64,000 nt of DNA. It comes from Podarcis gaigeae. Lineage: Eukaryota. How positions within the stretch are numbered: position 1 is the first letter of the stretch; every line of letters begins with the position of its first letter. Below are positions 4,901-45,752 of this stretch, in pieces. The position numbers were made by a program, and so were the translations under genes. The notes below the pieces were generated by a model. The model was not told the DNA's origin and did not search any database. It saw only the letters and a program-made list of their open reading frames with translations. The stretch lies in NCBI GenBank assembly GCA_964106915.2, contig OZ066914.1, one strand, 5' to 3'.

Positions 4901-7900
4901 ATTGGGAACAATTACAAGCATAGGATTCAGGACTCATGTATTCAATATCAATTTATCAAGGCAGAAAAGTGCATGTGTTTCATTGTTTATGATGTGAAAT
5001 GACATCTCTGTAAATAATTTTCTGCATATATTTTCAACTGTGACCATTATGTAAAGTTCACTTGCAGAGGGGAAAAAACCAAAGCATAAAATCAGAGTAC
5101 CTGTATTCATTTCTTGATCTTGATCTATCCGTTTTCGCTCCATTTCCACAACTCGTCTCTGAATGCCCCTGTAGTTAATATCACTGAAATCCTGCATGTT
5201 CTTCTTGACACGTTCTGTTATGGGGTCAGTAACTACAGGTGTGAAGCTGCCTTTGCTCTTTTCAAAGTCTTCATGGTATTTCACCTGGAATTTTCAAGAT
5301 AAGACATGGGTAGCTGGAATGGACATGCCATCAATTGTAGAAGGCAAGCAGAAATATAAATTCCTTAACTACCGTATTTTTTGCTCTATAAGACTCACTT
5401 TTTCCCTCCTAAAAAGTAAGGGGAAATGTGTGTGCGTATTATGGAGCGAATGCAGGCTGCACAGCTATCCCAGAAGCCAGAACAGCAAGAACATATTTTT
5501 TTTCTTGTTTTCCTCCTCCAAAAACTAGGTGCGTCTTGTGGTCTGGTGCATCTTATAGAGCAAAAAATACCGTATTTCAGAAGTACAATTAAACTTCACT
5601 GTGTTCACCAGATATGTCCATTTCCTGCAGTTTTTGTGACAGCAAACCTGATCTCTGCATTAGGGCTAGGCGATATTTGGTTTTCAGCATCATCATATGT
5701 CACCAGCTAAACATCACTATATACAGATACCATGATGTCTGAAATAAGGATGGTGGCTTCATGGTTTTCCCCGCATTGTGATTTTTGCTGGTGCCTACTC
5801 TTGTGATTCGCTGTCCCCTGCAGGAGGCAGGGAGCTGAGCCAGCAGTGTTAACCGGCTGCAGGAATCAAGAGAAGCATTGGCTGACTTCAAATTTCCCCC
5901 TGCATGTTTATTTTTGCAAAGCATGTGCGCACACAGCATGATTTGCAATCTATTGCCAGGTCAAAAATTATGAAACTGATATCATAATATGGGCTTCAAA
6001 GCAGTTTTTGGACAATATATCACCCAGCCCCACTCTGCATTTACCTTTAAATTAAATTTGTGCCTGGAACAGTTTCATCTTAAGGCATACTGAGCGCTGC
6101 TAAATAAGTCACCATGGCTGGTTTTACTTGTGCAGCCAGTTTCTTGGCTGCAAATACTTACGGTGGAAATGTGTCGCTGCGTCTCCCGAACACGTCTCAT
6201 TTCGGGGGTATCCAGGACAAAGGCTGCTTTACCTTGTACTTGTTTCCGGAAACTATCAGAGTAGAGGACCTAACAAAATGAGAAGATGTGAATAAACGTG
6301 GCCCAGCCAGTGAGAGAGCAGATTTTAAGAGAGGTATTATGTAGACATAAGAAATGAGGCATGAATGAAGAAGTGCTGAAGGCAGATGGATGCAAACATG
6401 ATGTGATCACCATTGAGGGGCTCATCACAAGATTATGCCACTGGTCTTTTTTTACTATAAATTGTGTGCCTTTGGAAGGTTATGGCTAATGTAAGCTTTG
6501 TTGATTTACATAGTTTCCAAACCCACCCCCAAGAACTGTAAGTGAAGCATAACACTTAAAGAATAGCAATAAAATAACAGAATACAGAAAGCTGCCTTAA
6601 ATCAGGTTGCATTATTTGTCTCTCCAGCCTAGTCTTGCCTATTCTGACTCAAGGGTCTCGAGCAAAGGAAGTCTTTCACAGCACCTGCTAGCTCCTTTTA
6701 AACAAAGGATGCCGGCCCTTACACCTGGACCTTCTGCATTTGAAGCATGTACTCTTAGCCTACCACTGACCTAGAGTCCTTCCTAAAATAAAACATTAAC
6801 TAAGTGAACAATACTGTTACTCGAAAGCAACCCCAGTTTAATGATGCAAGCCTTCATTCCAGGGTATTCTTATTTTATAGCACTTCTAGAAAATGCTCAG
6901 GCTTAAGACTTCCACAGTCCCATGGCAGCCATCAAGAGACCACCTCTACGTGCCCTTATTGTGGCAACTCAAAGCACAGATGATCTGCTCTCATTAAGGA
7001 ATATAAGAAAAGGGGGGGTCTCTGGCTGTTCCCAGCACCTTGAATTGTGTCTAGAAAGAAACAAAGGGACACAACGGACCATAAAGCACAAGAATGGGTT
7101 CTAGGTGTCCTACTCCCATCAAGCGTCTCTCCTTCCGCTGCATTGATTACCAGCAGAAGTTGTTAAAAAGTAACCAAGGACAGCCCAGTGTGGAGTGCAT
7201 GGTAGCAATCCAACTAAAAGTTGCATTGACAACAATGACTCTTGGAATGTTACAGCAAAATTTCACCAGAAATGTATGGAGGTGGCTTCCCCAAGCAACT
7301 CCCAGCAAATGAGTGGGTAGTGATGTCAAGAGTCCATTCTTTCAACGCACCCTACCTTTTGCAGTTACCTTTCAGCAGTTGCTTATATAGAAAAACATAT
7401 ATAATCTGGTTAGAAATAGTGGTCAGTTCGTCCATTCTTCAGAGCCCTCCTGGCTTTCCAAACAGATTCATTCTCTGTATTCAAAATGCAACTCCCCAAC
7501 TATTCCCCAAACAAACCACGTGATTTTTTCCCCCTGTCTTGAGACACAGCAGTAGATCATATGAATTAAAATGTTATCAACTGCTATTTCCCAGGCTGGA
7601 TCTAGACTGATCTTCTAAACGTAAAATAAAACATTCTATAGCATTTAATGGCAGCTTTTCTTTGCCGGTGGCTCGCTACTTTGTACCACCATCTGGTGTC
7701 ACATTTTAATAACACATTTCTAACATTTTAAACAAGTGTAGATCTGTCCCCAGTTGTCCCTCCTACATATATAGGCTCTTGACCAGGAGATGGTTGGCCA
7801 GAGGGACTGAACGGCCCTAAACGGACCCTGGGAGATGGAAGAAAAGCAATGGTTAGTGCTGTTGTCTCCAGCAGTTTATTTACCATAGAGCTTAAGCATC

Positions 7901-28900: not shown

Positions 28901-31900
28901 GGCAGATGGATGAAATGCTAAAGTGAATATGGTCTGAGATGAGCTTAAGAGGCTTACAGAACTGGCGAGCTGGCTGGTGTTCAAGACATGATGCATCGAC
29001 AGGGATTCAGACATGTCTGTCACTGGTTTGTGAAGTTTCTTCAGGTCCGCCTTATATTTAATCTGATGGGGGAAGTTCAAATAAACGCAATAAAGGAAAA
29101 GGCAAGCAACACTTAGAAATCGGACGCATTAAAAAGGAACAGGACTCAGTCAGACTTTGCATCAAAATGTTGTGGGGGCAGGGCACTGGGCAAGAGATGG
29201 CTAATGAGATCTGAATTACTGCAAATGTTCCTTAAATGATTTGTCGCAAAGTTGCCAGGCATATGTTCCGTTAGGGAAATTCAGGTACATGGCCCAAGAA
29301 GGCTAGGAGATGGCTGAAGATGACAACTCAACATCACTATTTTCTGTGGTTGTGCTTGCTTGTGGAATGTGCTTGTCTGACACCTTCATTACATAACCTT
29401 AGGTGCCAGGCAAAAAAATTCCTCTTCTCCTAGCCCTTTGGCTAATTAAACAATCTGCGGCCTTTTAAACCGTGTGTGTGTGTGTGTGTGTGATGTTGTT
29501 TGATACTAAAGCATGTATTTTTGTATTTTTATATTGTAAACTGCCCTGTGATCCTCAGATGAAGGTTGGTATAGAAATTTAATATATAATAATAATAATA
29601 ATATCCCTCCCTTCGGCCAGTATTATGTTCAGGGGCTCAACTCCCAGTTCTGCCTCATACTCGGTTTCATGGGCAAGCTGCTTCTCCCTTATGACTAGCT
29701 ACACCCCTCAAGGCAGCCATTTTGTGACTAGCCATGGTCTCCCAGCTGCCATTATGTGGTGATACTCATAAGCTTTTCCAAATGGGCCCATGAGCCTGAA
29801 AAGGGTTGGTAACTGTTATGTATTGAAGTTCTCACCCTGGGCCAGCAGGAGAATACTGTAGATAGTTATGCAAATAAGGGATCGAAAGTGACGTTCAGTG
29901 ATTGGATAGTTTTAGAAAATTGTTACAGTTACGTTGTACTGGAGCTCTATATAAGCAGGCTGACTGAACCCTTCAGATCAGTTCTGTTCTGCCCTCTGAA
30001 TAAACAAGAGCTGTTTGAAGAATCGCTGTGTCGTCTGATATGTTCACCCACAACTTAACAGTAACTACTGGACTAAAGGCCCACACATACCTCACTAGCG
30101 ATGTGGTGGGCATCTTTTAAGGTCTTGTAGATCTTGGCCTCCTTCAGGTCGTATTGCGGCTTATTGCCCTTCTCCTTGTCAAACTTCTCTTTGTATTTGA
30201 TCTAATTCCAAGAGGAACAAGTGTTAAAACAAGGTCCTGACTTTTAGCTTGTCTGGTGCCAAGGGAGAAAGAGTGCACATTGTCAAAACTGATCCCGATT
30301 GCAAGCAGACAGGTAGAACAATGCAAGCCATAAGACCTCTTTGAAAAAGAAGATACCATTAACGAAGGCCAGGAAAATTCACGTGATGCAGCAATGAACT
30401 TGGCACACACTGCATTTACAAGATTTCATGTTGCGTCTTTCATTCAGTAGTTGTGTTTCAGCTCCACATTTGAAATATATGACTCATTCATTGGGGGGCG
30501 GGAATCTGAATGTTGTGTGTGTGCAGCATGGCTATCAAGAGACACAAGAGCTAAATTATGACTGCATTGTACATTTTTCTGTGGCCTAAAATGGGTGTTT
30601 CCTGATACAGGGCAATCGAAACATCTGACTTTCTAAATATTTCTTTCCTGCCTTCCCTCCAAGGGATTTTGAGCAGCATTCAAGTCTCAGGGTAGATCTA
30701 CACACAGGGGAAAAACCACTATAAATAAGTCAGAAACTAGATCGTTATAACAAAAAAATTAAAAACCCCTATGAAAAGATTTCCTGCTCTCTGGTGTCAT
30801 CTGGTGTTGCATGTTATTAGTGCATTCAAATCATTGTTTCTTTACTAATAATGAAAGTAGGTTTGACAGAGACTGTAATTTCCCCAAGACTCCTCCCAGT
30901 AAATTTACACCTCAGCATGGTTTTGAACCAAGGTTTGCTACACTGGAGCCCAATGTTCTACAAATACACTGCCTAATCAAAGAGGCAGTTGCATTTGATC
31001 TGATAACTATTGGCTTTAAGAGAAATTGCAAAAAGACTCTGATTTTAAATAAAAAGACATGTTCATGATAGAGTATAAAGGTCCTGCTAGATGCACTATT
31101 CTCTCAGCACTAGAATTCAGCAGACTACTACAATGCACTTTTATTTACAATGACTTTCCTATGTCCTCTGATGGAGAGTCCGGTTCTGCCTGACAACTGA
31201 AGTGAGAAAATGCAGCTTGGTTACTTTCATTCTAATGGAGGAATAAACAGATTCACCATGGTTTCAGTTGAAGAACTTGCCAGGGGATATTACTGCTCAC
31301 TACTACTTTGCACTGTTAGTGTGCAAAGTACACAGAGCAAGGTTCTTAAGACTGAAAAGCTTCATTATCAAGCTACTCCATAAAAGAAGAGGTAAGATAT
31401 TAGTCATTTGCTAGAGAGAGAGAAAAAATAGCAGTTATACAAATCCTGGCATGACCCAGCAAAAATTAAGCACCTGGATTCCAAATGATTTCAACGAGAG
31501 CTTATTTTAGCCCTCTCACGTTGAAATCAATGGTTTGATATGCTTAATTCTACATGGATGGCACCCAATCTTCACCCCACCCCTGGCAAGAGCTGATTGA
31601 CGTAACTGATGAAAGGAATAGGTCATGCTAGGGAGCAATGCACAGGGCTGAAAAGAAGAAAAGTTTAACGTTAGAAAACTGGAAGATGCCGCAGTGCAGA
31701 TTTCAATTCCATTCCACGATTCTGGATGTCTAAAACATGTTGGCATGTTTTTATCCACACAACCCTGTATCCTTCATGCTGGATAGCCTCATCTTTTGGA
31801 CATGGGTTGACAAAAGATGCCAGGGGTCAATATTCAAGTGACAGTCAAGTACGCTGTTTATGTTTACTTTTTAAAAAATGCAGGACACTCTGGGCACTGA

Positions 31901-34441
31901 GGCTCTTGAGAAGGACAAGACTCTTCCTACAATGACACAGACACACACCCAAACACAAATGACGTATTACAGGTAGGTGGGGACCATTATGGGCCACCAC
32001 AATTCAGAGATGCATTTTGTGTCTGATTTCTGAATGAATAGTGGTTCCACAGGGCACAAGCTACTTTCTTAGAATACTCTGTGGGTTTCAAAAGCACTTT
32101 GACATTTGTCGTGAGGACCCACTAGATCAAAATGCAAGTCTCTCGTTAATACTTGCAATTTCCAAAACAAGAGGCAGGGGGACTTGTTTCAATATTAAAA
32201 CAAAAAGCAGCAACAAAACCATAAGACACAGTATACAAGAGTATCAGTAGCAGTGACAACATAGATGACAAAAGACACTGTGTAGATGGTGTTTTGACAG
32301 TTTTCATGGCAAATTCCTGCTGTTTCTCACAAGTAGAAAAAGACGGTTTCTCTGACATGCAGCTGTCCCATGCAACAATCACAAAGAGAAATGGGAAATA
32401 AAAGCATCCCCCTTTATTCCTTATGAAATTTCTGTCCATAACCTGTAGAAAATTGGTGCAAATATGTCATTTACTTTCTAAACCATTTAAGAGTGAGTGA
32501 AGAATCATCTGAAAATGTCTGTCCGCAAATAACAGTAGTTAAGGAGCTATTTGCAAGAGTTCAGGAATTTGTTTGAAGGTAATTCATCAGAAGCCTTTTC
32601 CCTAAATTGGTGGCTTTTAATAGGGGTGTCCACATTGTTATATTCAATGAATGTAGACTTTGAGGACTGTGTACAGAAATAGCTGAGCTGTTCACTCGTA
32701 CAATTTTTTACATGCAGCATTCCACAAGAGCATATTTTGTGTACCTGCAGCAGTTGAGCTATAAGAGCTCGTACCTGTGCTCAGTGCAATGTGTGGACAA
32801 GCTTATTCTGTTTCAAGAAACTCTGGGTTCTTAGTGAGAAGGTCAGAAATGATGAACTAGCTTCCCTGAACAACAGCTTGTCCGCTGCTACTGCTCCTCC
32901 TCTGCAATCCTGGAGAGGATTGGGAATGTTCCAGGATATATTCTCAGTTAATTCAGGGCAACAAAAGTGGTTCCTGAAGTCTGGGCAGCATTCTACATCA
33001 ACTGACTGTGCACATGAACTGGGGAGAAAGCACACTGCAGAGTGCACAGTTGTATTCAAGTGTAGATAGCTGTCACAGTTCAAATACAGTTCAAATGCCA
33101 CATATAAAATACAGAGCATGGGTTGTGCTCTTAACACACTGACATGAAAACTAGTGAATGGTTCAGGAATTGCCACCAATGTCATATAGTGGGAAGGGTA
33201 AATGTTTGACTAAATTCCCCACTTTCATGTATTTTGGACAACTCAAGCTTTTTCTTGAAGCCGAGACATTCTCAGAACAAATTCCCAACTTTGCATAAGG
33301 AAGAAAGGGGAGGTCTCACAAATCCACAAGGTTTTAATGTTCTTTTTTAAAAATAAAAATAAAAATAAAAATAGAAGCAGTGCCTTGAACACTTAGGATT
33401 GTGCCAAGAATATAGAATCTAGCAAGAGACTCATGAAATTGGTAGCAGCATAGGAGAGCCGCTTAAAATCCATCTTACATGGCTACTTAGGACATTAGCT
33501 TTCTTAACGTGTCTCATCATGGGCGTGTCGTATGATGCAGCCCCATGGCCCCTCATGCGTCCTTTGATGTATTCTGCCTACAAAGCGTAGCAAGATGGCA
33601 AGATTAGAATGGCAAACCTCCAAGATGGACAAAGCAAGAAGCTGAGGTAGAAGAGCCAGTGATATTCTTGTCTTTGTGGGGGGCAGGGAGTCTCGTGGGA
33701 AGCAGCATGGGTCAGAAACGCACCAAGTGAAGTCAGTCAGTGTTTGTCAGAGAGGAAAGAGGCATACGCTAGCACAAAAACGCAAAAAGTTAACACGTTG
33801 TTTGAAGTACTTTCCCTGAGGGGAAAGTCCAGTGCTGCTACCCTCACTATAGAAATATATAACAGCACAAACATTAAAATGTCTGCTAAAGAAAATTGAT
33901 AAGGGAATAACTGGAGAGAAGACAATAAAAAGAAACATTTTGCCTCCCAGTACGCAGCAAATGACCAAACATTTATGGCATGTTTTTTAACACAAAAATT
34001 GTTTCAGGTCATTGGTATGGGAGCCTTCCATATGTTGTTGGACTCCAGTTCCTATCACCCCCAGCCAGCATGGGCAATGGTCAGGGAAGATGGGAAGTGT
34101 ATTCCTCAGGTACCCCATGCCTGATTTATATGGAGGAAATGTCAACTACTGAAATCATTGTTATTATGGCTAAAGAAAGGCAATTAGCATCAAAGTTTGG
34201 CATGGTCAGGAATCTGCTAAGGGCCAGCACTCTAGCAGGGCACCCACTGAACCTCTCTTCACCAGGACCAACCTGCTTATTCACTCATCTTTTGCTGTGG
34301 CTCAGACAATACTGGTGATGTAAAGGATGAGATGAACCCTTGGGGGGTTTTGTGGGGGATTGGGGGGTTCCACTGTATTCAAAACAGATATAAATCATTT
34401 TAAATGCAAGGTAAGAGTTTAGTAATATAAACCAAAGAGAG

Positions 34442-34475
<34 letters not shown>

Positions 34476-37041
34476 GAAGGAAGGAAGGAAGGAAGGAAGG
34501 ACAAGCCGAGGCCCATGGAAACATGAATCTGGATTACTTCGCTCATCAGTGCTACTTTGTGAGAACAGAGACTCTGAATGCACAAGGAGTTCCTGTCCCA
34601 CTCAGTATAATGGGTGAGGCAGCTCCCTGTGTGTAAAGGGTGCTTTCAGCACAGTAATTGTCTCTTCAATGAGCTAAATAGGAAGCTCACCTACACAGGG
34701 ACACAATACACAGAGTATAGCATCCACGTACCACAGCAGACTTCAATAGGCTGTCAATACCTTTCAAAACAATCTAAGCCCCTAGGTCAAGAGCTTGATC
34801 AGGGATGGTAGAGTTGGAAGGGACCACAAGGGCCATCTAGCCCAAACCCCTGCAAGGCAGGAATCTTTTTGCCCGGCGTGGGGCTCGAACTCACAATCCT
34901 GAGATTAAGAGACACAAGCTCTACTGACTTCGCTAACTTTCGGGACGGGGTGGGTAGGCTTTGGTGGCAGCAGTGAAACAAGGAGGTATTGAAGTACATA
35001 CACCAGAGTCCAGCACCCGGATGTGGATGCAAATTGCCCACTCCCCAGATATCAGATTGATGATTGGATGACCAGAGATAAGTAAATAAGCTCCTCCCTC
35101 ATTGGATCTGTACAGAACAGTGGAGGGGGGGGGGGTAGGCTGTTTGCTTGTACCGCATATTTATGTGCATATGAGATGGTGAGGTGGCCACAACCACGAT
35201 TGACAGACAGCCCTGGAAGATTTGGCCAGAAAATATTAACCACCCCAATCTCAAATAAATTATCTCTAAAGCTGCTTTATCTGTAAAGTCAACATTACAT
35301 CAAAATGATTGCAAAAGAAAATGTATGCCATATGGTTATAAATTGAAGCAGCCACCTGTTCATACCTGGCTTGTAAGTTTGGACACCTCCTTGGCAAGTT
35401 CAATATCTGGACGTCCAAGCATGCTGACTCCCATACCAGCTTCTCCACGAGCTTTGGCTTTATATTCAATCTAAGACGAATATATGAAATGTCAAGGGGT
35501 TAAAAAAACAAAAACAACACCCCCCCGGCTTCTACATACTGAAATGAAACAATTTATATGCATGCTGTCATATTGCCACAAGTTACTGAACAGTTACACT
35601 GATAAAGTACTTACATCACTGACTAAATGGGAGACTTGGGTGGCTTTCTTAATATCAGGGCGATCCGCCACACTAGTGTAATGGAGCTTGGATTTGGCAT
35701 CCTTTTTGTATTGGATCTAGGTGAACACAAGGATAAAGAGAAGCAGTTACTGTTGTGTTTTCTTTTTAAGGAAAGAACAAGATCCTCTTGATGATAATGT
35801 TTTCACCAGAGCTATTGTTGATGCCGGGGGACGCAGGTGGCGCTGTGGGTTAAAGCCTCAGCGCCTAGGACTTGCCGATCAAAAGGTCGGCGGTTCGAAT
35901 CCCTGCGGCGGGGTGCGCTCCCGCTGATCGGTCCCAGCGCCTGCCAACCTAGCAGTTCGAAAGCACCTCCGAGTGCAAGTAGATAAATAGGGACCGCTTA
36001 CCAGCGGGAAGGTAAACCCGGAAGTGTCTCCGGACAGTGCTGGCCCCTGGCCTCTTAAGTGAGATAGGCGCACAACCCCAGAGTCTGTCAAGACTGGCCC
36101 GTACGGGCAGGGGTACCTTTACCTTTACCTTTATTGTTGATGCCCACCACCCATGCAAAAACTGCATACATTTCACTGTAACGAAACAAAGTCGGCATGG
36201 AAAAGCTACAGCCACCCATGTCAACGTGTGTTTCTCCTATGGCCCATAGCTTTGAAAGGATTATTCCTTAGATTGCCCATCCAGGGTTTTAATGACACAA
36301 CTGGAGGAATAACTTACAGTGCTCTGATTCTTTGCAACTTCCATGGCGTGTTTCACATCAGGAGGCTCCAGCATGATTGAATAGTCTGACTTGCCTTTCT
36401 CCTTGTGGAATTTCTTTTTATAATTTGTCTGTTTCAGAACAGAAAAGAGTTGTGACACACATTCTTCACCTGAGGCTTACTTTGCCGACATTTATAATAA
36501 GAAACATAGGTGATGACTTCTACGCTTAAGGAAGACAGGGGAGCATTCGTGTGGGCCCTCACACATGCACTTGTAGGAAGCTTTGTTTCCTGATCTGCTG
36601 CAAGTTTTCCTCTACGGTCAGAAGCTCTCCACATTAAAAAGAGAGAGGGAGAGATTCAAAGGGCAGCTACATAAACGAGAATAAAGTTGACTGTAAGGAC
36701 TGGTCCCTATGTGGAAAGCCCATCAGTCAAAAACACAACAAACAGATATTGCATTGAATGGGTGTTCCCCTGATGATTTATGGCTATTTAATCCAGCAGA
36801 GATTTTCGTCAGTCAAACAAAGATCAAGGTGATCTTCAGTGATTGCTCCTTCCTACACCAACCCCGTGCTCCTGACTGCTGGGGAACCCTTTGGAAGAAT
36901 ATAAAAGATGGGACACGTACCCAAAATCATAGGAGGCAAGCACCAAGCAATTACTTAACCTATGTCTCAATTGCTGCATCCATATTTTATTTACAGTTAT
37001 TTTAAAATGACTAGAAAGAATTAACTGCAATGAACCCAATT

Positions 37042-37087
<46 letters not shown>

Positions 37088-40000
37088 TTATAGTTCTTCA
37101 GCCGCTACCACTGCCACTCATTTCTACCACACTCTTTAATTTGTAAAGCGTTTCAAAACCTATGTTCATAATCAAGTCCCTTACCAACAATTCATTCAAA
37201 CAGGCATGGATCATGCAAACTCATATCAGAAGAAACAATTTCCAGATTTGACAGCCTGCAGAAATATATTTGAAGGCATTCTCTCTCTTTTTCAACACGC
37301 TAAGCTTCCATCTACACACGATTTCAGAAACTCTGTTCAACCACGTTATTAAACTTATGCTGATATTTAACTATGTGAGCTAACAGGCTGGTGTAAGTAA
37401 CATCAGCCCTGGTGAACATGGAGCAGCACCCTTTTAGTAAGCCTTAATTGGCATGAAGTATAATTTATAATGGAGCAACAACAGTTTCCATCACCAAGTA
37501 TAAACAAAACAAATGCAAGCGTCAACTCAACCAGTGATGTGACTATAGTAATGCAAAAGCAGTTTACCTCACTGACGTTCTTGGTTACGTTTTTGACATG
37601 AACAGTGTCTCGTGTTTCTGGCAATTTTGTAAAGGAGCCATGTGGCAGGTGCTTCTTAACATGTTCTTTGTATTTGTTCTGGTGATGAAGAGAAACAACA
37701 GTTATTGAAGTAATATGTATTAAATAAGGAATAAATGCTGAAAACTGGAGAATTATATACATACATATATAAATGATAAATTACCTCAGACACGAGAGCA
37801 CTAACAGTCTTTGCAAGAAGGATCTGAGGAGTATCTGGAACTGGGTGGATAGTTCCCCTTTCCTTGTTATGCTTCTCTTTATATTTTAACTGGGAAATGA
37901 AATGGAAAGGTATTAGTTTCAAGCAGTGTATAATAAACAGGGCTACACAAATGGGCTCGCCACTGATGGGCATGTGTTTTATTCTGGTGTGAGTCTCCAT
38001 CCTTCTCTGGACTACAGAAAGGCAAGAGCTAGCTCAAATTTTGCATTAACTATTGGAGAGCTTTGGAGGACTCTATTCTAAAGTCCGAACACAGTGTGGG
38101 AAAATTTCTGCCCTTCTACCAGTATGAGAGAAGAGTGGTGGATTTCCTGACATTGTACTGAGACCTGGTGATGTTCAGTGTGGCAGAGACAACTCTATGC
38201 CCTTCAACCAGTTTGGCGTGGGGGCGCTGGATGGCATTAACAGTGCAATTGTGCTGGGCCCTGGAGATGTTTTGAAGTACATCCAGAGCCCAGAAAGGCA
38301 CTAGTAAGAAGGCAGTGACTTGGGCTGGTTATAAAGGCTACAGGAAATTCGAGGACCCCTGTAAATCATGGTAGTTATTTCTTTCCTTACCACTATTACC
38401 AGAACTGAACCTGACATTAAAAGGTGTTTTTGTTATCCAATGCTGAAAATGTTTCTCGGTGTGATTGGTTTGCCACACCTACTTAGAAAAGTACAATCAT
38501 TTGCTAAGGTTTACATGCTGATCTGGGTGACCAAGACTTAAAAAGGGGTGGGGGGTGGGGAAGCTTCCATTAAAAGGATTTTAGAATACTCACATCACTC
38601 GCCAAGATTGCATTCTGCAAAGCCAACACTGTGTTTTTGTCATCTGTTACGGATAGCTTGCATCCTCTATAGTACTCTCGGTCATATTTGTAATCATACT
38701 ACAAAGAAACAGGAGAATAAAAAGTGTCAGAAGTGCAGCCTGTGGCACCAGAGGTATGCCTCGCTATGTCAGGAAATAAAATGGGTGCATGTGGTTTTAG
38801 TTTCCTTACATCACTCTGTTGCAAAGATGATTTGGCAGCTTGGATGAAGTCCGGTCTGTCCACAGTCCAGTGCCAGTGAGCTTTGGCAGCTTCATATTTC
38901 TTCTTGTAATCCAGCTGTTCAAAGAGAAATAGATAAACAATGTAAACATAGACTCAAGCCATTCTTGTAAAAGGGTCACCATAAAACAAGAGTGAAAAGG
39001 ATATTTTTGATTCCCAAAAATAAATACGTAACTAAATGTTTGGTGGTGCAGATGCAAACTTTTATGTCTAGGAATTCTGACACTCCCCATAAAGTTTCAC
39101 TTTCCCTTGGCCATTTATCCAAAGTTGAGCAGTTGATAAATCTCCTATTTTTACCAGTAGGCTGGGAGCGCAACCTCCCCGCCTCCCCACAATATGAGTG
39201 GGCTATGTTTGCCATGGCTTGCGGACTGTACAAGGCTGCAGACAAACAGGTCTGCCACTTTCTACTTTTCCATCCATATCTGCCTTTTTCTCGCTCTTCT
39301 ACAGAATTTTAGCTCTGCTGTGGAACAAGCATGGGAAAAGGCATAGCCTTAAAAGGAAAAAGACAAAAGATTAAACAGGTCGTGGGTTTTATGTTTGGAA
39401 CGACCACATTTTTTTAGCTGTCAGGAATACAGCATGTTAAAAAGGATGGTTTGTTCGTACATGGCTCTTTCAGGAAGTTGGAACCTGGGGATTTGCACCA
39501 CCTACAATTTGTACTCTGCCCAAAGGGATGGGGGTGGACATTTCTCTATCCCACACATATCTAAAGTTGGCATGAGATGCACTGCCTCATCCGATCTGGC
39601 TAGGAGTTTCCGTAAGCGTATGGAAATTAGGCACCGAAAGAGGCCTCAGCTGAGTGGGACCTGGGAGCCCTACTCCCTCAGTTTCCTTTGTAAGGCTTAG
39701 TCACCGGCAACAATAGCACTGGACTCACATTGCTGTTTACTTTGTAGGCCTGCTTGGCAGCTTTGATATGAACGGAATCCGGTACAACGTTGCAGTGAGA
39801 CTTATTCTGTTGATAGACTTCTTTGTATTTCAGCTGTCGAAAGAACAAGAAGGTTAACGTTGCAGATCTCTTTACACGGCTAAACAGAAATCACCCCAGG
39901 GAAAATTGTGTTAATCTGCCCTGGTAGGTCCAAGGAGGCACTGAATTTAGCGAACATCTGAGCAGTGGAGCCCCATTTGCCCTAAGAGAACAACCTTCGC

Positions 40001-43000: not shown

Positions 43001-45752
43001 GCCACTTAGCCGAATAAGAAGAGTGGGTGAGTAAGCATTTAAAAAATGGGTTTAAGAAGCGTCCCCCTCCCTCAGTCAAGCCCACAAAGTCTACTGCAGG
43101 GGTAAGCAAACTAAGGCCCGGGGGCCAGATCCGGCCCAATAGCCTTCTAAATCCGGCCTGTTGATGGTCCAGGAGTCAGCTTGTTTTTACATGAGTAGAA
43201 TGTGTCCTTTTAATTAAAATGTATCTCTGGGTTGTTTGTGGGGCCTGCCTGGTGTTTTTACATGAGTAGAATGTGTGCTTTTATTTCAAATGCATCTCTG
43301 GGTTATTTGTGGGGCATAGGAATTCGTTCATTATTTTTTCCAAAGTATACTCCAGCCCCCCACATGGTCTGAGGGGTGGTGGACCAGCCCATGGCTGAAA
43401 AAGGTTGCTGACCCCTAGTCTACTGAGATGAATGAGGTTCTACCAGTTTATGACTGTGGATGGCAGCCCTGTAGAGACTCTGGTAAAGTTTACTAGTCTC
43501 TTCATACAACAGTAAGATAGCTTTGGCTAGTCTCCTCATACAACAGTAAGATAGCTTTGGTTAACCATGCACCCAATCGACATTTAAATTGTAGCATGGG
43601 GTGGGGAGGCTTTGCAATGTGAAACTGTTACTGGTGATTATGCCGATGACTTAAAAATTTATGACGTAATGCAATGAAATGTATTCATGGGAGAATGGAG
43701 AAGTCGGCGTTTCTCTGCAGAACATTCTGTGCAGCTGAAAATCTTGGTCTAGCTTATAGAAAAATTGGGAAGCCTTAGCAGTTGTCTAAAAACAATGCAA
43801 AAAAACCGCTTTTTAAAATGTTGCTTCATTTTCACTGCATGCAAATACAGAGCATGCAAGGCAACACATAGCATGCGTAAAAGAGGGGGAAGAAAGGCAT
43901 GGACAAGGAATCGCAACACATACAAAATAATGGCAAGAATGCTCTAAGCAGGGCTTGGTGACCAGTACCACAAGTAAGAAGACATTTGTATAGGTTGGAT
44001 ACAGAGAACCCAGTCTGTGTTATAGTTAATCCGGTGTATTTTGCTTGAAGGCGGCTGGCACTCCAAACCTAACCATATCTCCATGCAAATAAATTTCATT
44101 GATTTCAATGCAAGTTACTTTTAAGTAAATGTGCTTAAGAACACAGCCTGGCACCCTGATCTTTCCTTTTGCTTGGAAGATCAAGAGGGTTCTCCTGCCC
44201 AACAGAATTTTACCATTTTATGTCCAAATACTTGCATCTTAATTTGACTGTGAATCCCAACCTCTAGAGTTTGAGTGCTATCTAATGCACCTGGTATTGG
44301 AGCTTTTCATGGATCCACATGGTAACTTACGTCCAATTTTGTAACAAGAAGCCTACAATCCTATGCACACTTACCTGGCTCTCCTGAATTGTGTTGTACA
44401 ATGCTGTCAGCATATCTGGTCGCAGAATTTCATTACATCCATGTTGCAGGAACAACTTGGCACTAGCCTTATATTTTTTCTGTGCATGCAAACAGCAATG
44501 AAGCACAAAAAGGACTTATGAAGACAAAGAACTACAAAAAAGCTCTAGATCCCAGAACAATGAGATTTAGGCCTTTGGGATATTTGTGTATTCTCAGAAC
44601 TGCACCAATGCACAGCATTCACCAGGGGCAACAGAATCAACAGACACAGAACTGAATTTTAAAAATGGAAAAACGAGAGTATTACGGTGCCATCATTATG
44701 CAATAATCTGGTTTCCATGCCATTTTCCTTGTAGCACATTTTTGCCTTTGAGCTAAATGGCGCAGAGTTTATTCGTTTCTAGGTTATCTTTGCAACTCGA
44801 CTGACATTTGGTGGAGTGACTTTGACAGTACATTGGTGCATAGTTTATGAGATCACAAAGTATGAATAGGCTCACTCAAAAAGCTGCTATGCTGTTTTGG
44901 GTGGCAAAGTACAGATAGGCTCACTCAAAAAGCTGTTGTGCTGTTTTGAGTGGCAAAGTATAGATAGTTCCAGATACAAACAGAGGGGAAACCTTTGTCA
45001 ATATCATAGGCAAAACCTATGACATCTTTGACTGCAGGCATTTCAGGCAGGTAAAGAAGTGGTCATCCAAGAGTGACAATAGCCAGATTCTGGGTGTTCT
45101 GGCCAGCTCTGTCACAGTACCTGACTGCTTAGTTCGCCTCCCAATTTGGCCAGCAAGGTTCTAGGGTCATCCACCACAAGGGAATACTTATCCTTCTTCT
45201 TCTCATAATCAGATTTGTACAATTTCTGTTCACATCGAACAGTAGCAAAGTGAAAAAGTGGAGGCACAAAGATACATTGAGATCAATGCAAAAACCCATT
45301 AAACAAATCCACCCACTTAAAGAGTAACACCATAAAAAAGGAGAACGGATATAGGCAATAGAAAACACAGAGCTATAATAGCTTTTACAGAGCAATACTG
45401 TGCAAGTATTACTGAAACGTAAAACTTGCTGGTGGATCTTACTCCTAAGTAATCACGTAAAGGGTTGGAGCCTTAAATGTACAACACTAAAAGCCCTTTA
45501 AATCCTGCACTGCCATCCTCCATTTAGTTATAGTTATAGTTATAACTCTATGCATTTATCACTTGCATAAATTTAGTATAAAATATATGCACATGCTATA
45601 CTATAGTTCTGCATATAGTCTAGATTGGGACCTAGCTACTATTTATTATTCTTTATGTCTAAAGTCAATGGATAGAACAAACACCATTAGATGTACTGTT
45701 GGATAAGTGTTAAATGGTTCTTGTCCTTGTATTTGTATTTTAAAAAAACAAT

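What the first reader, a model, noticed from the sequence alone, without database searches (positions are those of the whole stretch)
33479..35470. Extra nebulin-module exon: candidate second mutually exclusive exon pair in the last super-repeat
Seen: a clean 99-nt phase-0 exon [33 protein letters not shown] in a 5-kb gap. The D(L)xxLxG-type landmark recurs every 7 modules (60733, 56486, 47569, 38594, then ADLKKL at 28958), and the last interval is 7 only if this exon is skipped or replaces a neighbour. It resembles 35366-35470 (xEY start, GxG, LxS end). Established (from memory): in human nebulin the ...GRPDIEMAKKAAKLSSQ module is followed directly by VKYRENFDKEKGK, counting exons 145-166 leaves no slot for it, and 143/144 is the known MXE pair. 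Inference: a switchable module near the super-repeat/linker boundary, lost in mammals or gained in sauropsids.
Basis: partly seen in the sequence, partly recalled or inferred. Interest (0 to 1): 0.85.

Follow-up and report, generated by a model that had tools for sequence, protein, structure and literature searches.

The report
Ancient optional nebulin linker exon
This is a real, optional one-repeat exon of the muscle protein nebulin, found from lampreys to cattle and bats. It is added beside its neighbour rather than swapped for it, and it is already in public gene annotations and very probably noted in a 2021 survey.

Summary
The exon is real: 33577-33479, minus strand, 99 nt, phase 0, encoding one nebulin module. 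The mutually exclusive reading fails. In stranded RNA-seq of a related species it is spliced after exon 35470-35366 (25 reads) and onto 30201 (32 reads). It is skipped in 3 reads, and the replacing junction 35615>33577 was not seen. Among 468 fetched nebulins, 430 carry the module, always directly after the 35470-type module and never instead of it. It is a cassette exon: annotated isoforms with and without it exist in shark, sturgeon, frog, newt, lizards, alligator and fowl. It is no sauropsid gain, being present in both lamprey nebulins. It is not lost in mammals either, being annotated in opossum, ruminants, camels and bats; the pig and bichir models lack it. It lies in the linker after the last super-repeat, so the seven-module rule does not apply. 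Gohlke et al. 2021 (PMC7754682, Fig. 3 legend) describe such an extra repeat, very probably this one. What remains of interest is inference: the exon inserts inside module M164, within the fragment reported to bind desmin and CapZ. No earlier scan note covers this exon.

The parts
33479..33577 (-). Cassette exon X: 99 nt, phase 0, one 33-aa nebulin module; lies between the equivalents of human exons 154 and 155 (numbering inferred by counting from the 143/144 pair)
   Evidence: Sequence; junction reads 25 in, 32 out, 3 skipping; orthologous module from lamprey to mammals
35366..35470 (-). Upstream exon B (exon 154 equivalent), first simple repeat after the last super-repeat; co-included with X; its donor is the fork between inclusion and skipping
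   Evidence: 35615>35470 14 reads, 35366>33577 25, 35366>30201 3; contig of run X1 ends exactly at 35366
35615..35716 (-). Exon A (153 equivalent), seventh repeat of the last super-repeat under the exon-based definition
   Evidence: exon map; definition
30091..30201 (-). Downstream exon C (155 equivalent); receives both the inclusion and the skipping junction
37785..37889 (-). Exon (150 equivalent) in whose middle (PQILLAK) the published M160-164 desmin-binding fragment begins; the fragment ends in exon C, so X falls inside it
   Evidence: Primer table of PMC3681697, mapped through the pig protein P0004 and the exon map
38594..38698 (-). Third repeat of the last super-repeat (degenerate WLKG landmark)
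   Evidence: definition
45121..45225 (-). [quoted passage not shown]
   Evidence: alternative use in frog/pig versus shark/carp/lamprey proteins
44375..44479 (-). Second exon of the known mutually exclusive pair (144-type)

Best explanation
X is an ancestral vertebrate cassette exon of NEB. It is symmetric (phase 0-0), so inclusion adds one nebulin simple repeat without changing frame, and skipping restores the human-type junction. It is mostly included (about 90% in the one quantified sample) together with both neighbours. Shown: splicing pattern, position, conservation, and annotated isoforms of both kinds in many lineages. Inferred: it lies just past the last super-repeat, where the seven-repeat tropomyosin/troponin register need not hold, so one extra repeat is tolerated. 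At one repeat per actin subunit it would lengthen the Z-disc-side part of nebulin by about 5.5 nm. It splits module M164 in two, making one degenerate actin-binding motif (SQxEY followed by I/L/T/A/V, no Lys) and one near-canonical one. Being optional, it could be shortened (ray-finned fish) or dropped from some lineages (pig and bichir models; rodents, cheetah and trout per Gohlke et al.).
For:: junction counts 25/32/3, no 35615>33577; inclusion 0.89 (95% CI 0.72-0.98) at the shared donor and 0.91 (0.77-0.98) at the shared acceptor; a contig of a second species breaks exactly at the fork 35366; 14 RNA-like runs of 7 related organisms hold an exon-sized share (0.23-0.46) of the words; 430 of 430 module-bearing proteins keep the upstream module; with/without isoforms in Anolis 12/3, Pogona 13/2, Sceloporus 14/1, crocodylians 11/4, galliforms 13/2, sturgeon/paddlefish 12/3, Xenopus 12/3, white shark 14/1, newts 14/1; identity to the window peptide 67-70% in lampreys, 70-76% in mammals, as high as or higher than the flanking modules in mammals; a separate 90-nt exon with AG/GT ends in toothfish (L001, about 6755-6844). 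for position and structure.
Against: Junction counts come from one run of a related species (organism B), tissue unknown, low depth; no RNA run of the window's own species was offered. The protein isoforms are mostly automatic RefSeq models. The 5.5-nm and partner-binding steps are untested for this module. In teleosts and sturgeons the module has lost the conserved Tyr and is 30-31 aa, so it may not be a normal actin-binding repeat there.
Confidence: 0.9

Rival explanations
1. X and 35470-35366 are a second mutually exclusive pair that keeps a seven-module register.
For: The count from 38698 to 29062 is 7 only without X; both exons are phase 0 and of similar size.
Against: 25 reads join B to X, and the replacing junction is not listed. 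No protein of 430 has X without B. The region is linker, not super-repeat. Similarity to B is unremarkable, although the true 143/144 pair is also dissimilar, so similarity is no test either way.
Confidence: 0.02
2. X is effectively constitutive where present, and the skipped form is splicing noise; it is a presence/absence difference between lineages only.
For: Only 3 skipping reads; all lamprey and teleost proteins fetched include it, though these were selected by searching for it.
Against: Skipping isoforms are annotated independently in nine groups from shark to fowl; graph fork at 35366 in a second species.
Confidence: 0.15
3. The cassette is a regulated switch of partner binding: inclusion alters the desmin/CapZ-binding M160-164 region, and the conserved HGAASYDTP core, rather than the actin motif, is the functional part.
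For: X falls inside M164 of the published desmin-binding fragment (mapping); M160-164 is also reported to bind CapZ and M163-170 desmin. The core is nearly invariant across vertebrates while the N-terminal actin half-motif decays in ray-finned fish.
Against: No binding data; no tissue or stage regulation shown; lineages such as pig do without it. No significant splicing-factor motif cluster (YGCY 11 versus 7.6 expected, p=0.058). This is compatible with the best explanation, not exclusive of it.
Confidence: 0.3
4. X is an unused, decaying or chance open frame.
For: Lowest profile score among the super-repeat and linker modules apart from exon 63003-62890; no Lys after the Tyr.
Against: Spliced in 25-32 reads; conserved since the lamprey split.
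Confidence: 0.01

Closest known systems
Extra C-terminal simple repeat of Gohlke et al. 2021, J Gen Physiol 153:e202012783 (PMC7754682), Fig. 3 legend
   Same: [quoted passage not shown] X is the second repeat after the last super-repeat, has no slot in the 154-165 count, and is absent from the pig model P0004.
   Different: The paper's alignment (Data S2) was not available, so identity rests on position and distribution. In the passages read, the paper does not call it alternatively spliced, cover lampreys, or place it inside M164.
RefSeq/UniProt nebulin isoforms (e.g. Anolis carolinensis XP_062822060.1, Pogona vitticeps X3 versus X6/X7, Gallus gallus XP_040533027.1, Bubalus bubalis X17-X30)
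   Same: Same module, same position, 97% identical in Anolis; forms with and without it are annotated.
   Different: Automatic models without inclusion levels or function.
NEB exons 143/144 (S21a/S21b) mutually exclusive pair
   Same: Single-module, phase-0 alternative exons of NEB; the pair is present in this window (45225-45121, 44479-44375).
   Different: 143/144 replace each other inside a super-repeat and keep the count at seven; X adds a module in the linker and is co-included with its neighbours.
NEB Z-repeat cassette exons 166-177
   Same: Single-module symmetric cassette exons outside the super-repeats that change the module count.
   Different: Z-repeats are 31-aa, 93-nt near-duplicates with an SSVLYK motif; X is a unique 33-aa module 12 exons upstream.

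Membership tests
Mutually exclusive exon pair (143/144 type) | The two exons are not joined to each other in transcripts | tested here: not met
   35366>33577 junction, 25 reads from 19 starts; adjacent in 430 proteins
Mutually exclusive exon pair (143/144 type) | Common upstream exon splices to either member | tested here: not met
   35615>35470 14 reads; 35615>33577 not listed, threshold 3 reads
Mutually exclusive exon pair (143/144 type) | Module count is unchanged between isoforms | tested here: not met
   Isoforms with and without X keep both upstream modules, so they differ by this one module
Cassette exon | Both inclusion junctions and the skipping junction occur | tested here: met
   25 and 32 inclusion, 3 skipping reads in a related species; both isoform types in nine groups
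Cassette exon | Frame-preserving, canonical splice sites | tested here: met
   99 nt, phase 0-0, AG/GT
Cassette exon | Regulated by tissue, fibre type or stage | not testable with these tools
   One reads call; tissue labels are coded
Nebulin simple repeat | 31-38 aa module matching the nebulin profile, exon boundary within SDxxYK | tested here: met
   33 aa; profile E=0.0017; boundaries SQ|AEY and SH|IKYK; definition
Nebulin simple repeat | Intact YK of the actin-binding motif | tested here: inconclusive
   Tyr kept but Lys replaced in lamprey, sharks and most tetrapods; Tyr lost in teleosts and sturgeons
Nebulin simple repeat | Binds one actin subunit | not testable with these tools
   Needs binding or structural data
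Nebulin super-repeat (seven-module unit) | Lies within a seven-repeat unit with the WLKG motif in repeat 3 | tested here: not met
   Last unit runs 39833 to 35615; X is the second repeat after it; in Labeit numbering inside M164, past M162
Gohlke et al. 2021 extra repeat | Position shortly after the last super-repeat, no slot in human numbering | tested here: met
Gohlke et al. 2021 extra repeat | Present in most vertebrates, absent in pig, cheetah, trout, rodents | tested here: inconclusive
   Wide presence confirmed and absent from one pig model; cheetah, trout and rodents not checked
Gohlke et al. 2021 extra repeat | Sequence identity with their Data S2 | not testable with these tools
   No supplement held

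The most novel reading that the evidence does not exclude
A cassette exon whose optional use goes back at least to the jawed-vertebrate ancestor acts as a fibre-type or stage switch inside module M164. It would change desmin/CapZ binding and nebulin's register at the Z-disc edge, and it may be a used but unannotated exon in primates. The published M160-164 fragment, as mapped here, lacks it.
Probability: 0.25. Interest if true: 0.45.

Novelty: already known. Interest (0 to 1): 0.2.

Why it matters
As it stands, little: the module is annotated in many genomes and very probably already noted in print. For specialists two points are useful. The human/mouse module count in the linker is the derived, shorter state. 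The extra module sits inside the desmin/CapZ-binding fragment and is optional from sharks to birds, which gives a natural one-module test of how strict nebulin's register is near the Z-disc.

Tried and rejected
Mutual exclusion with 35470-35366, 35716-35615 or 30201-30091: rejected by junctions and protein order. Sauropsid gain or mammal-wide loss: rejected. Origin by tandem duplication of 35470-35366: no support; the best match in the window is 40768-40661. A further hidden module exon in either flanking intron: none on the minus strand. MBNL-type regulation: 11 YGCY in 300 nt upstream, the most of 43 exons, but p=0.058 against shuffles and not repeated in toothfish; no TGCATG or ACTAAY; dropped. 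Three of the four laid runs (contig sets X1, X5, X11) showed nothing on the exon although the index listed them as holders; the tool filters records silently, so these holes were not used. The chicken locus could not be fetched (protein over the size limit). Paper searches found no study of this exon's splicing.

Full report
Observation. The window holds the 3' part of a nebulin (NEB) gene on the minus strand, from a squamate as judged by its closeness to Anolis. A profile trained on 37 other module exons of the window scored it at 15.8 bits (E=0.0017 among 2,696 candidate frames), above every intronic candidate (best 7.8 bits). It found no other hidden module in the two flanking introns.

Splicing. 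A 321-nt query around X found 14 RNA-like runs from seven related organisms with word shares of 0.23-0.46, about the exon's share of the query; no RNA run of the window's own species was offered. In stranded raw reads of organism B (run X23, about 12% read, tissue unknown) the junctions were 35615>35470 14 reads, 35366>33577 25, 33479>30201 32 and 35366>30201 3. The junction 35615>33577 was not listed (threshold 3 reads). Inclusion is 0.89 (95% CI 0.72-0.98) at the shared donor and 0.91 (0.77-0.98) at the shared acceptor. In organism A, a contig covering exons A and B ends exactly at 35366, where the two paths diverge, as expected if both forms exist (inference). X is therefore co-included with both neighbours and sometimes skipped: a cassette, not half of a mutually exclusive pair.

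Conservation. The exon peptide, searched alone by reference, hit nebulins of lamprey and two teleosts. Region searches extended this to both lamprey nebulin paralogues, sharks and rays, paddlefish, teleosts, frogs, newts, Anolis, Pogona, Sceloporus, alligator, birds, opossum, ruminants, camels and bats. Identity to the window peptide is 97% in Anolis, 79% in chicken, 70-76% in mammals, 67-70% in sharks and lampreys and 45% in teleosts; in mammals this is as high as or higher than for the flanking modules. Of 468 proteins fetched, 430 carry the module, always directly after the B-type module; 35 lack it and keep both upstream modules; none has it in place of B. Many were fetched by searching for the module, so these are not frequencies. 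Among cluster members not selected that way, both forms are annotated in Anolis (12 with, 3 without), Pogona (13/2), Sceloporus (14/1), crocodylians (11/4), galliforms (13/2), sturgeon/paddlefish (12/3), Xenopus (12/3), white shark (14/1) and newts (14/1). All 14 scorable bichir models and the one pig model lack it. These are mostly automatic models. In toothfish the module is its own 90-nt exon with AG/GT ends. The module is ancestral to vertebrates, and its optional use appears to be at least as old as jawed vertebrates (inference from annotations).

Position. [quoted passage not shown] B is the first linker repeat and X the second. Counting from 143/144 gives B=154, C=155, twelve constitutive repeats 154-165 and Z-repeats from 166, in agreement. 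In Labeit numbering the super-repeats end at M162. The primers for the M160-164 fragment in PMC3681697 encode PQILLAK and TPKYNP, which map through the pig protein to the middle of exon 37889-37785 and the middle of exon C. X thus splits M164.

Mechanism. Shown: a symmetric exon that adds one module. From established structure (one simple repeat per actin subunit, about 5.5 nm, exon boundaries inside SDxxYK): inclusion would add one actin-subunit length on the Z-disc side of the regulated thin filament. Inferred: the new B|X motif keeps Ser and Tyr but lacks the Lys, the X|C motif is near canonical, and skipping makes a canonical B|C motif. Ray-finned fish have shortened the front half and lost the Tyr while keeping the HGAASYDTP core, which hints that the core matters for something other than actin. 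M160-164 binds desmin and is reported to hold a CapZ site, so a switch of partner binding is the natural hypothesis; nothing here tests it (about 0.3). A YGCY cluster upstream was not significant (p=0.058).

Prior knowledge. Gohlke et al. 2021 state in the legend of Fig. [quoted passage not shown] Position, wide presence and absence from the pig model match X. Their alignment was not available, so identity is very probable, not proven. The exon is also annotated in RefSeq for lizards, birds and several mammals. I found no paper on its alternative splicing, within a library that lacks most subscription journals. The scan's earlier notes near this place concern other features.

Limits. One quantified run, of a related species and at low depth; a rare replacing isoform in some fibre type cannot be excluded. 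The contig sets X1, X5 and X11 showed no record on the exon, which the tool's silent filter may explain; I drew nothing from that.

Verdict. Real exon, wrong model. It is an ancient cassette exon in the nebulin linker, already annotated and very probably already reported. Interest 0.2; the open part is whether its inclusion is regulated and changes desmin or CapZ binding.

Noticed in passing
window 32317-33081 (intron after exon X): Run X1 (organism A) has an 826-nt contig at depth 14.8 on this unique intronic stretch, against 56.7 for the exonic contig; X5 has pieces at depth 2-3; raw reads of X23 have none. AATAAA/ATTAAA hexamers lie near 33338, 32621 and 32418 on the minus strand, and read-through from X would stop after 15 codons. 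Pre-mRNA, DNA carry-over or intronic polyadenylation; unresolved.
   Followed up: partly
proteins P0052, P0075, P0149; L001 about 6755-6844: In teleosts and sturgeons the module is 30-31 aa and has lost the otherwise invariant Tyr of the actin motif, yet keeps the central core.
   Followed up: partly
proteins P0146, P0363, P0454, P0393, P0442: Ruminants, camels and bats share a two-residue (Gly-His) duplication in the module, absent in opossum, making it 35 aa.
   Followed up: no
proteins P0145, P0293-P0306: All 14 scorable Polypterus senegalus models lack the module while paddlefish and teleosts have it: a possible independent loss; genomic DNA not checked.
   Followed up: no
proteins P0003 and P0069: Petromyzon marinus has two distinct nebulin genes, both with the module; the P0069 type lacks one downstream linker module (the 28120-28016 equivalent) in the model seen.
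   Followed up: no
window about 34020-34105, 34800-34910, 30700-30850: Short interspersed-repeat fragments in the flanking introns attract many partly matching reads and contigs.
   Followed up: no
window 17577-8909: Twelve 93-nt Z-repeat-type exons were mapped, within the 12-15 range reported for reptiles.
   Followed up: no
window 7644-7858 and 1437-1476: Earlier scan notes list a candidate alternative terminal exon and a hammerhead core here; unrelated to this finding and not tested.
   Followed up: no
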